NCBI GenBank assembly: GCA_964057225.1
Contig: CAXKVF010000008.1
Location: 1-64,000 of the forward strand
Reading direction: 5' to 3'
DNA: 64,000 nucleotides
From: Auanema rhodensis
Taxonomy: Eukaryota > Animalia > Nematoda
In this document: positions 22,336 to 22,670 of the stretch, piece after piece
Numbering within the stretch: position 1 is the first letter of the stretch
How the letters are laid out: each line of letters opens with the position of its first letter
Translations under genes and position numbers: made by a program
Notes under the pieces: model-generated
Database searches by the model: none
What the model was told of the DNA's origin: nothing
What the model saw: the letters and a program-made list of their open reading frames with translations, nothing else

Positions 22336-22670
22336 GATATTATTCAATACCTTTGACGGTATTGATAAACACCCTCGAAGGTATTAAAAAATACCTTTTA
22401 ATTTTAGTGTTCTTTTCATTATTTTTGGTTTAAATTTTATCAAAGTAGTGTTAAAACACACTATTCTATCATTTGTCATCATTCTACAGTTGAAAGTATT
22501 AACATTTGCATCGAAAACTTATAGGTATTAATCAATACCTTTCTTGGTATTTATAAATACCGTTTAGGGTATTGAAAAATACCACACTTTATTCATGAAT
22601 AAAACTATTGGGTATTTATTAATACCAGTTCCGGTATTGATTAAAACCTATGTTGGTATTAAAAAATATC
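22336..22670. promoter_or_regulatory. Left subterminal array of nine GGTATT-N4-AATACC-like palindromes; candidate protein-binding sites
   Basis: Starts at 22336/22358/22380, 22524/22546/22568, 22611/22633/22655: three triads, each with 22-bp spacing. Binding role is inferred. Confidence 0.7.

What the first reader, a model, noticed from the sequence alone, without database searches (positions are those of the whole stretch)
22336..22670. Helically phased palindrome triads at the left end, with the same motif at the right end
Seen: nine 16-bp GGTATT-N4-AATACC-like palindromes in three triads, each with exact 22-bp spacing and variable linkers. The motif recurs in the right arm at 30663, 31017, 31164, 31312 and 31778 (ending 12 bp from the terminus); I did not notice it in the middle of the element or in the rDNA. 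Known: 22 bp is about two helical turns, and asymmetric arrays of subterminal binding sites define the ends of Tn7/Mu-type and CACTA elements. Inference: binding sites for a dimeric mobilisation protein, standing in for TIRs. This is the best internal evidence for a DNA-level element with defined ends rather than a random captured fragment.
Basis: partly seen in the sequence, partly recalled or inferred. Interest (0 to 1): 0.8.

Follow-up and report, generated by a model that had tools for sequence, protein, structure and literature searches.

The report
Phased palindrome sites in rDNA element arms
A 9.6-kb foreign DNA element that splits a nematode's large ribosomal RNA gene has clusters of one 16-bp palindrome at both ends and nowhere else; their conservation pattern marks them as docking sites for a paired DNA-binding protein, most likely helpers for moving the element in and out.

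Summary
GGTATT-N4-AATACC (up to 2 mismatches) occurs 30 times in the window against 3 expected, and every hit lies in the two identical copies of a 9,603-bp insert in 28S rDNA. Nine sites form three triads with exact 22-bp spacing 133-467 bp from the left end. Six more lie in the last 1.15 kb, the last ending 12 bp from the right end. None lies in the middle 8 kb or in the rDNA.

Between paralogous triads, half-site positions differ at 7/108 comparisons and all other positions at 46/99 (p = 2.5e-11). The half-sites are therefore under selection, as expected for a two-fold symmetric protein.

The element has no terminal inverted repeats and no recognisable enzyme. It is flanked by an exact 18-bp repeat of the target. 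In four public read sets the left arm has one context only, the 28S gene.

My best reading (0.45) is accessory, arm-type sites around the crossover core of a circle-integrating, recombinase-driven element served in trans. A cut-and-paste transposase reading is less likely. The binding protein is unknown.

The scan noted this same array at least ten times on other pieces of this genome. Function is inferred, not shown.

The parts
22185..22202 (.). Left copy of the exact 18-bp repeat GGTAAAACTAACCTGTCT (28S target; candidate crossover core)
   Evidence: rDNA homology runs to 22202 and resumes at 31806, with an 18-bp overlap of the intact unit
22203..31805 (.). The 9,603-bp insert in the 28S gene (rRNA is on the minus strand); a second, 100% identical copy lies at 47934-57536
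22336..22395 (.). Triad 1: three 16-bp palindromes at 22336, 22358, 22380 (22-bp spacing)
22524..22583 (.). Triad 2: palindromes at 22524, 22546, 22568 (all perfect half-sites)
22611..22670 (.). Triad 3: palindromes at 22611, 22633, 22655; sites 1-2 also match triad 2 sites 1-2 in inverted order (41-nt arms, 83% complementary)
   Evidence: (I1)
30520..30839 (.). Right-arm outer zone: full palindrome at 30663-30678 plus solitary AATACC half-sites at 30520, 30695, 30834
31017..31032 (.). Right-arm palindrome inside a 147-bp tandem unit, within the module GAAAATGG(G)TATT-N4-AATACCCTCAA
31164..31179 (.). Right-arm palindrome (1 mismatch) in the second 147-bp unit
31312..31327 (.). Right-arm palindrome; its 34-nt module is an inverted copy of the one at 31151-31184 (91%)
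   Evidence: (I2)
31620..31635 (.). Weak site (2 mismatches), membership uncertain
31778..31793 (.). Terminal palindrome GGTATACATCAATACC (GGG...CCC extended), 12 bp from the right end and so next to the 18-bp core
31806..31823 (.). Right copy of the 18-bp repeat
48067..48401 (.). The same nine-site array in the second element copy
56394..57524 (.). The same right-arm sites in the second element copy

Best explanation
The palindromes are binding sites for a two-fold symmetric (dimeric) sequence-specific DNA-binding protein, and they act in cis for the element's own movement. The half-site centres are 10 bp apart, so one dimer would contact two successive major grooves across an A/T-rich centre that need not be contacted. 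Dimers 22 bp apart would sit on roughly the same face of the helix and could bind cooperatively in threes. The most likely role is as accessory or arm-type sites. If the element is closed into a circle, the right arm (last site 12 bp from the core), the 18-bp core and the left arm (first triad 133 bp from the core) form one attP-like region of about 1.6 kb. A nucleoprotein complex on these sites would deliver or orient a site-specific recombinase, probably a tyrosine recombinase supplied in trans, to recombine the core with the identical 18 bp of the 28S gene. The unequal arrays in the two arms would give the complex its direction. Shown: the sites, their confinement to both arms, selection on the half-sites, the exact 18-bp repeat, the lack of TIRs and of any enzyme gene, and a single genomic context. 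Inferred: protein binding, dimer geometry, the circular intermediate, the type of recombinase and the role in recombination.
For: Enrichment and confinement to the arms: 30 hits against 3.0 expected, none in the central 8 kb or the rDNA; solitary half-sites are also enriched in the right arm. Selection: against the consensus, 4/108 half-site mismatches versus 41/90 elsewhere (p = 9e-13). Between paralogous triads in register, 7/108 versus 46/99 (p = 2.5e-11). The six within-triad linkers have no indel despite about 46% substitution. All isolated right-arm sites are GGTATT-N4-AATACC units, so that is the recognised unit rather than the AATACC-N6-GGTATT junctions. One module occurs in both orientations, as expected for a DNA site. 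Spacers are 53/60 A/T. Recombinase-type anatomy: an exact 18-bp repeat equal to the target, no TIR, the same 28S junction in four read sets. Precedents: crustacean whispoviruses with tyrosine recombinases integrate into 28S with a duplicated CCGTCGCGRGAC. The telomere-associated tyrosine recombinases of the majaniviruses, in the same paper, are described as arm-binding-domain recombinases (PMC10871703). The only match to that motif in this rDNA unit overlaps the 18-mer by 4 nt. Fungal Starships, also tyrosine-recombinase elements, have 6-16 bp direct repeats in 5S rDNA (PMC11162782). Unverified scan notes report larger elements at the same 28S spot with a probable recombinase-SET gene.
Against: No protein was shown or predicted to bind the sites. 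No recombinase is encoded in this element, and I could not obtain the reported recombinase-bearing relatives to see whether they carry the same palindrome. Classical arm-type sites (lambda P/P') are oriented, not palindromic. No circle junction or empty-site turnover was tested. The two copies here are 100% identical and were probably spread by unequal crossing-over, so present-day mobility is unproven. An 18-bp duplication is also within reach of staggered nicking by R1-type retroelements (14 bp). Phasing at 22 bp is partly a by-product of tandem duplication of a 22-bp unit.
Confidence: 0.45

Rival explanations
1. Subterminal transposase-binding sites of a cut-and-paste DNA transposon. A DDE-type transposase made elsewhere binds the arrays at both ends, pairs them and excises or inserts the element, with the arrays replacing TIRs.
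For: Same motif at both ends in unequal arrays, as in Tn7, Mu, hAT and CACTA elements (established knowledge). The only other place in three large collections with two such palindromes 22 bp apart is an ATACCG-motif cluster in a repeat of an unidentified eukaryote, beside a hAT fragment. Scan notes mention palindromic boxes at both ends of Maverick-like elements with a hAT transposase in this genome (unverified).
Against: No TIRs. The 18-bp exact repeat is much longer than the 2-11 bp of known DDE superfamilies (established knowledge). Palindromes cannot tell left from right. The left arm has a single genomic context in four read sets. No transposase was found in the element.
Confidence: 0.15
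2. Maintenance or replication sites of an extrachromosomal form. The triads work like the EBNA1 or LANA site arrays of herpesvirus episomes, or like plasmid iterons: a dimeric protein binds cooperatively to tether, segregate or replicate an excised circle.
For: Phased, cooperative-looking triads of dimer sites. KSHV LANA binds three adjacent sites per terminal repeat cooperatively (PMC4787769). A 128-bp stretch of 23% G+C lies between triads 1 and 2. The element carries its own intron-containing gene of unknown function.
Against: No evidence of a free circle. No recognisable DNA-binding or replication protein is encoded. This does not explain why sites also sit in the opposite arm, right up to 12 bp from the end. 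The AT-rich stretch is not far from the element's background composition.
Confidence: 0.12
3. Regulatory or chromatin sites: an array for a transcription factor, insulator or silencing factor. It would control the element's cargo gene, shield it from RNA polymerase I read-through, or recruit chromatin modifiers.
For: Selection on half-sites only shows binding, not purpose. The arrays bracket the element as boundary elements would. The element sits inside a very highly transcribed gene.
Against: The motif is absent from the rDNA spacer and genes, so it is not the host's own polymerase I terminator or fork-barrier site. The left triads are 3 kb and a 2.7-kb tandem array away from the putative gene. 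No RNA run was listed as holding the arm (weak).
Confidence: 0.13
4. RNA-level signals of a non-autonomous rDNA retroelement. The element is co-transcribed with 28S rRNA, and the hairpins in its 3' region (the left end) are recognised by the reverse transcriptase of an R1/RT-type element, which makes the 18-bp duplication by staggered nicking.
For: R1-type elements make 14-bp duplications in 28S (PMC2718515). Non-autonomous R2/R1 derivatives exist (PMC3414825, listed). The triads fold well as single strands (z = -5.8).
Against: No reverse transcriptase or endonuclease remnant. No ribozyme or other Rfam family. No A-rich or simple-repeat tail at either end. Changes in the stems break pairing rather than being compensated. 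The same sites occur at the opposite end and in both orientations. The good fold follows automatically from repeated palindromes.
Confidence: 0.05
5. Functionless repeat: a small palindromic tandem repeat that expanded by slippage and happens to lie near both ends.
For: The triads arose by duplication (D12). The element is full of other repeats.
Against: A seven-fold lower divergence at half-site positions than at neighbouring positions. Independent sites in different sequence contexts in the other arm.
Confidence: 0.05

Closest known systems
attP arm-type and accessory sites of heterobivalent tyrosine-recombinase elements (phage lambda Int/Xis/IHF paradigm)
   Same: Clusters of protein sites in both arms, unequal on the two sides, around a core identical to the target. 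Three adjacent sites as in P'1-P'3 or the Xis sites. After integration they end up at the two ends of the element.
   Different: Lambda arm sites are short, oriented and spread over about 240 bp. Here they are 16-18-bp palindromes spread over about 1.6 kb, in an animal genome, and no integrase is encoded in cis.
28S rDNA-integrating whispoviruses of crustaceans with tyrosine recombinases (PMC10871703)
   Same: Integration into 28S with a duplicated target motif. That motif (CCGTCGCGRGAC) matches this rDNA with one mismatch at a place overlapping the 18-mer by 4 nt. No TIRs are reported for these viruses. Related recombinases of the telomere-inserting majaniviruses, in the same paper, are described as arm-binding-domain type with a C2H2 finger.
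   Different: Those are viral genomes of hundreds of kb with an 11-12-bp duplication. No palindromic arm arrays are described in that paper. The present element is 9.6 kb and has no enzyme.
Starships, fungal tyrosine-recombinase cargo elements (PMC11162782)
   Same: Cargo-carrying DNA elements. Direct repeats of 6-16 bp match the target, and rDNA (5S) has been targeted repeatedly.
   Different: They are fungal, carry the recombinase gene at one end and often have TIRs. No phased palindrome arrays are reported.
Subterminal transposase-binding repeats of Tn7, Mu, hAT (Ac), CACTA (En/Spm) and the piggyBac internal repeats
   Same: Multiple copies of one short motif in unequal arrays inside both ends. 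Tn7's TnsB sites are also 22 bp long.
   Different: Those elements have TIRs, short duplications and oriented sites. None of that is seen here.
Episome-maintenance arrays (EBV oriP, KSHV LANA sites LBS2-1-3, papillomavirus E2 sites)
   Same: Palindromic dimer sites with an uncontacted central spacer, bound cooperatively in small phased groups (PMC4787769 for LANA).
   Different: Those serve replication and tethering of free viral circles with the binding protein encoded in cis. Neither feature is shown here.
R1/RT-type 28S-specific non-LTR retrotransposons and their non-autonomous derivatives
   Same: Strict 28S site specificity and a duplication of more than 10 bp (14 bp for R1).
   Different: No reverse-transcriptase remnants, no 3' tail, no truncated copies, and DNA-type palindromes in both arms.

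Membership tests
Cut-and-paste DNA transposon with subterminal binding sites (Tn7/Mu/hAT/CACTA type) | Terminal inverted repeats at the two ends | tested here: not met
   No inverted repeat joins the two termini. The ends read TACAAAAAAAATG... and ...CCGCCATGGGC.
Cut-and-paste DNA transposon with subterminal binding sites (Tn7/Mu/hAT/CACTA type) | Short target duplication of fixed, superfamily-typical length (2-11 bp) | tested here: not met
   The exact repeat is 18 bp.
Cut-and-paste DNA transposon with subterminal binding sites (Tn7/Mu/hAT/CACTA type) | The same short motif repeated inside both ends | tested here: met
   Nine sites on the left and five to six on the right, none in between.
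Cut-and-paste DNA transposon with subterminal binding sites (Tn7/Mu/hAT/CACTA type) | Copies at several genomic places, with a transposase in an autonomous partner | tested here: not met
   The left arm is one unitig joined only to 28S in four read sets (contigs can miss rare copies). No transposase domain was found in the element.
Site-specific (tyrosine) recombinase integrating element | Identical core sequence at both junctions and in the empty target | tested here: met
   GGTAAAACTAACCTGTCT at 22185-22202 and 31806-31823, present once in intact units.
Site-specific (tyrosine) recombinase integrating element | One fixed insertion site | tested here: met
   Both copies in the window, and the contigs of four runs, join the arm to the same 28S position. 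Independence of the insertions is not shown.
Site-specific (tyrosine) recombinase integrating element | Recombinase gene in the element or in a related autonomous element | tested here: inconclusive
   None in this element. It is reported for larger elements at the same site only in unverified scan notes, and I could not fetch them.
Site-specific (tyrosine) recombinase integrating element | Circular intermediate (right end-core-left end junction) | not tested
Site-specific (tyrosine) recombinase integrating element | Arm or accessory sites bound by the recombinase or its helpers | not testable with these tools
   Only the sequence signature of binding is available.
28S-specific non-LTR retrotransposon or derivative | Reverse transcriptase/endonuclease ORF or remnant | tested here: not met
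   No Pfam match in any ORF of 70 aa or more.
28S-specific non-LTR retrotransposon or derivative | 5' ribozyme or 3' tail, 5'-truncated copies | tested here: not met
   No Rfam family at E <= 0.1, no A-rich tail, and both copies are full length.
Helitron | Hairpin 10-12 bp before a CTRR 3' end, 5' TC, insertion between A and T without duplication | tested here: not met
   A palindrome does lie 12 bp from the right end, but the termini are not TC...CTRR and there is an 18-bp repeat.
Episome maintenance/origin arrays (EBNA1/LANA/E2 type, iterons) | Phased groups of dimer sites | tested here: met
   Three triads at 22-bp spacing.
Episome maintenance/origin arrays (EBNA1/LANA/E2 type, iterons) | Cognate binding protein encoded in cis, and a free replicating circle | tested here: inconclusive
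   The only gene-like region has no recognisable domain. Free circles were not tested.

The most novel reading that the evidence does not exclude
The triads are the tethering or replication centre of a free circular form of a ribosomal-DNA-resident element in a nematode, a plasmid-like life stage comparable to herpesvirus or 2-micron episomes. They would be bound by a so far unrecognisable protein, perhaps the element's own Cys-motif gene product.
Probability: 0.1. Interest if true: 0.85.

Novelty: new variant of a known kind. Interest (0 to 1): 0.5.

Why it matters
Animal DNA elements that integrate by site-specific recombination are barely known, and nothing is known about their cis-acting DNA. 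If these arrays are arm or accessory sites, they give a defined 16-bp probe with which to fish out the protein or proteins that move a new family of rDNA-specific elements. They also give a natural attP-like substrate for an integration system that targets a universally conserved 28S sequence. The half-site conservation is the best internal sign that the enzyme-less 9.6-kb insert is, or recently was, a working mobile unit rather than a captured fragment.

Tried and rejected
1. Two palindromes 22 bp apart as a pattern: 0 hits in viral contigs and 0 in 185,579 prokaryote genomes. A phage, plasmid or bacterial-operator origin is therefore unlikely. Three metagenome contigs matched, but they are one unrelated repeat of another eukaryote.

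2. Rfam at gathering score and at E <= 0.1: nothing in the element.

3. Pfam on all ORFs of 70 aa or more and on the exon-like ORFs: nothing above noise. An atlas look-up of one exon gave nothing.

4. A splice model of the gene-like region at 25.6-27.5 kb did not give one clean frame. I left it, because it is another finding.

5. Single-strand folding gives strong z-scores. I rejected this as evidence because repeated palindromes must pair with each other and stem changes are not compensated.

6. I tried to reach sister elements through exact protein look-ups of ORFs in the 28S flanks and in the element. None is in the collection.

7. The Maverick-type box TATCGAA-N6-TTCGATA from a scan note is absent from this window.

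8. A host polymerase I terminator or fork-barrier reading is rejected because the motif is absent from the rDNA spacer.

9. No RNA run was listed as holding the arm. This is uninformative.

10. Cross-species conservation could not be used, because the arm is identical in all four read sets.

Full report
SETTING. The window is a tandem rDNA array with the rRNA on the minus strand. Units are about 8,054 bp. Earlier scan notes call the organism a nematode; I could not check that independently.

Two 28S genes are split. Homology to an intact unit runs to 22202 and resumes at 31806, with an 18-bp overlap. A 9,603-bp insert (22203-31805) is therefore flanked by the exact repeat GGTAAAACTAACCTGTCT. 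The second insert (47934-57536) is identical at every base, so the copies probably spread by unequal crossing-over. The site lies about 430 nt from the 28S 3' end, in the peptidyl-transferase region.

THE OBSERVATION. GGTATT-N4-AATACC with up to 2 mismatches occurs 30 times against 3.0 expected, and no shuffle reaches 30. All 15 sites per element lie in the arms.
- Left arm: nine sites form three triads (22336/58/80, 22524/46/68, 22611/33/55). Start-to-start spacing is exactly 22 bp inside each triad, with 144 and 43 bp between triads. The array lies 133-467 bp from the left end.
- Right arm: sites at 30663, 31017, 31164, 31312, 31620 (weak) and 31778. The last ends 12 bp from the right end.
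- The central 8 kb and about 45 kb of rDNA have none.
- At three mismatches only background appears.
- Three solitary AATACC half-sites also sit in the right arm, at 2.3 per kb against 0.1-0.2 per kb elsewhere.

IS IT MORE THAN A REPEAT? The triads are copies of a unit of about 66 nt (D12), so exact phasing is partly inherited. The pattern of divergence, however, is not neutral.
- Against the consensus, half-site positions carry 4 mismatches in 108, and spacer plus linker positions carry 41 in 90 (p = 9e-13).
- Comparing the three triads position by position, half-sites differ at 7/108 and everything else at 46/99 (p = 2.5e-11).
- Despite that divergence, none of the six within-triad linkers has gained or lost a base.
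- The N4 centre is 53/60 A/T.
- Changes inside half-sites break the dyad rather than being compensated. What is conserved is sequence, not a hairpin.
- All isolated right-arm sites are GGTATT-N4-AATACC units, so that is the recognised unit and not the AATACC-N6-GGTATT junction.
- Three right-arm sites share a 34-nt module, once inverted (I2, 45), as expected for a DNA site.

This is the signature of a two-fold symmetric protein that reads two major grooves 10 bp apart. Neighbours two helical turns away would be on the same face.

WHAT THE ELEMENT IS NOT.
- It has no terminal inverted repeats.
- No ORF of 70 aa or more, and none of the exon-like ORFs, matches any Pfam family above noise.
- No Rfam family, ribozymes included, matches at E <= 0.1.
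- Neither end has an A-rich tail.
- The double-palindrome pattern is absent from viral contigs and from 185,579 prokaryote genomes.

CONTEXT IN OTHER DATA. Eleven DNA runs under four organism labels and three studies hold 0.37-0.88 of the element's words. I laid the contigs of four of them on 22185-22960. In three of them (X3, X4, X9) the contig that carries the left arm starts at 22185 with no difference and stops 11-12 nt beyond it. That is the k-1 overlap with 28S. In X3 and X4 this contig runs on to 22811 and 22784; in the shallow run X9 it ends at 22643. In X1 the same stretch (22206-22811) is covered by overlapping pieces, again with no difference.

The triad array therefore has one sequence and one context, the 28S gene. 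No dispersed family with paired ends was seen either. Contigs cannot exclude rare copies. Because the arm is identical everywhere, cross-species conservation could not be used. From 22782 onward the 281-bp tandem repeat has 50-100 times the depth and many loose ends, so it also occurs elsewhere in the genome.

MECHANISM. The following features fit a site-specific recombinase better than a DDE transposase:
- an exact 18-bp repeat equal to the target;
- no TIRs;
- a fixed site;
- unequal site arrays in both arms.

Closed into a circle, the right arm, the core and the left arm make one attP-like region of about 1.6 kb, with the 31778 site next to the core.

There are precedents. Crustacean whispoviruses with tyrosine recombinases integrate into 28S and duplicate CCGTCGCGRGAC (PMC10871703). 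In the same paper, the related telomere-associated recombinases of the majaniviruses are described as arm-binding-domain enzymes with a C2H2 finger. The only match to the duplicated motif in this rDNA unit (one mismatch) is at 31820-31831 and overlaps the 18-mer by 4 nt. Fungal Starships have 6-16-bp direct repeats in 5S rDNA (PMC11162782).

Scan notes report 11-kb and 18.9-kb elements at the same 28S spot with a probable recombinase-SET fusion gene. These are unverified, and I could not fetch those elements. Whether they carry the same palindrome is the key open test.

I put 0.45 on arm-type or accessory recombination sites. The broader claim, selected binding sites for a dimeric protein, I rate at about 0.8.

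RIVALS.
- Cut-and-paste subterminal sites (0.15). Against it are the missing TIRs, the 18-bp repeat and the lack of polarity in a palindrome. For it is a parallel in three metagenome contigs, where CGGTATT-N4-AATACCG units 22 bp apart lie in an ATACCG-motif cluster beside a hAT fragment.
- Episome tethering or origin sites (0.12). These would resemble the LANA triads (PMC4787769). No free circle or binding protein is known.
- Regulatory or boundary sites (0.13). The motif is not the host's polymerase I terminator or fork barrier, since the rDNA spacer lacks it.
- RNA signals of a non-autonomous R1-type retroelement (0.05). R1 makes 14-bp duplications (PMC2718515), but nothing else fits. The strong single-strand fold (z = -5.8) is automatic for repeated palindromes.
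- Neutral repeat (0.05). This is contradicted.

VERDICT. The inference that a dimeric protein binds here is well founded. The transposase and TIR-substitute analogy is only partly right.

The feature is a new variant of a known kind of cis element. Its value is as a handle on a little-known class of animal rDNA-integrating elements. The scan has noted the same array many times on other pieces of this genome.

Noticed in passing
window 22782-25448 (and 48513-51179): The 281-bp tandem repeat (9.3 copies, with an 84-bp sub-repeat) has 50-100 times the contig depth of the neighbouring unique arm and many loose ends in four read sets. It is therefore also an abundant satellite or dispersed repeat elsewhere in the genome. 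Each unit holds a 42-bp imperfect palindrome GGTATA...TATACC with an inner GTATT-N6-AATAC, followed by a G/C-run motif.
   Followed up: partly
window 22588-22603: A perfect 16-bp palindrome TTTATTCATGAATAAA sits in the 27-bp gap between triads 2 and 3, at the centre of the larger inverted symmetry of those two triads.
   Followed up: no
window 31820-31831 (minus strand; also 6090, 14144, 39875, 57551): CCGTCGTGAGAC is a one-mismatch match to the duplication motif published for 28S-integrating crustacean whispoviruses. It overlaps the 18-bp repeat by 4 nt, so unrelated mobile elements use almost the same 28S spot.
   Followed up: partly
L001 258-495, L002 40-255, L003 965-1170: Three metagenome contigs of an unidentified eukaryote share a 100% identical cluster of ATACCG/CGGTAT motifs, including two CGGTATTTTCAAATACCG units 22 bp apart. 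The contigs diverge right after ...CGATAATTACCAGCC. In L001 and L003 an internally deleted hAT element follows (CAGTGGCGGATYCAGG ends; hAT dimerisation domain, E = 3.4e-7).
   Followed up: partly
window 27624-27696, 27853-27925, 29971-30081: A G/C-rich box GCGGGGGTGCGGGGGCGGCTAGCCCCCG with about 70 nt of flank occurs three to four times inside the element (84-91% identical). This suggests nested small repeats.
   Followed up: no
window 25675-27477 (+ strand): A gene-like region antisense to the rRNA has nematode-style short introns (GTAAG...TTTCAG) and repeated Cys motifs (CPICW, CHCQICRG, CHCQACKG). My splice trials hit an in-frame stop near 26656 and need a frameshift in an A-run near 27210, so it may be decayed or consist of two genes. 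It has no Pfam or atlas match.
   Followed up: partly
window 22206 and 22398-22456: In the deepest run (X1) the left-arm unitig breaks at these places, and a 1-nt gap variant is seen at about 0.5% of the depth. Minor variants of the arm therefore exist in that sample. The break at 22206 is 3 nt inside the element end and could hide an alternative junction.
   Followed up: no
window 31778-31805: Both Rfam LSU alignments run 15-28 nt into the right end of the element (31791, 31778). The terminal segment with the last palindrome faintly resembles the 28S sequence it displaces. This may be chance.
   Followed up: no
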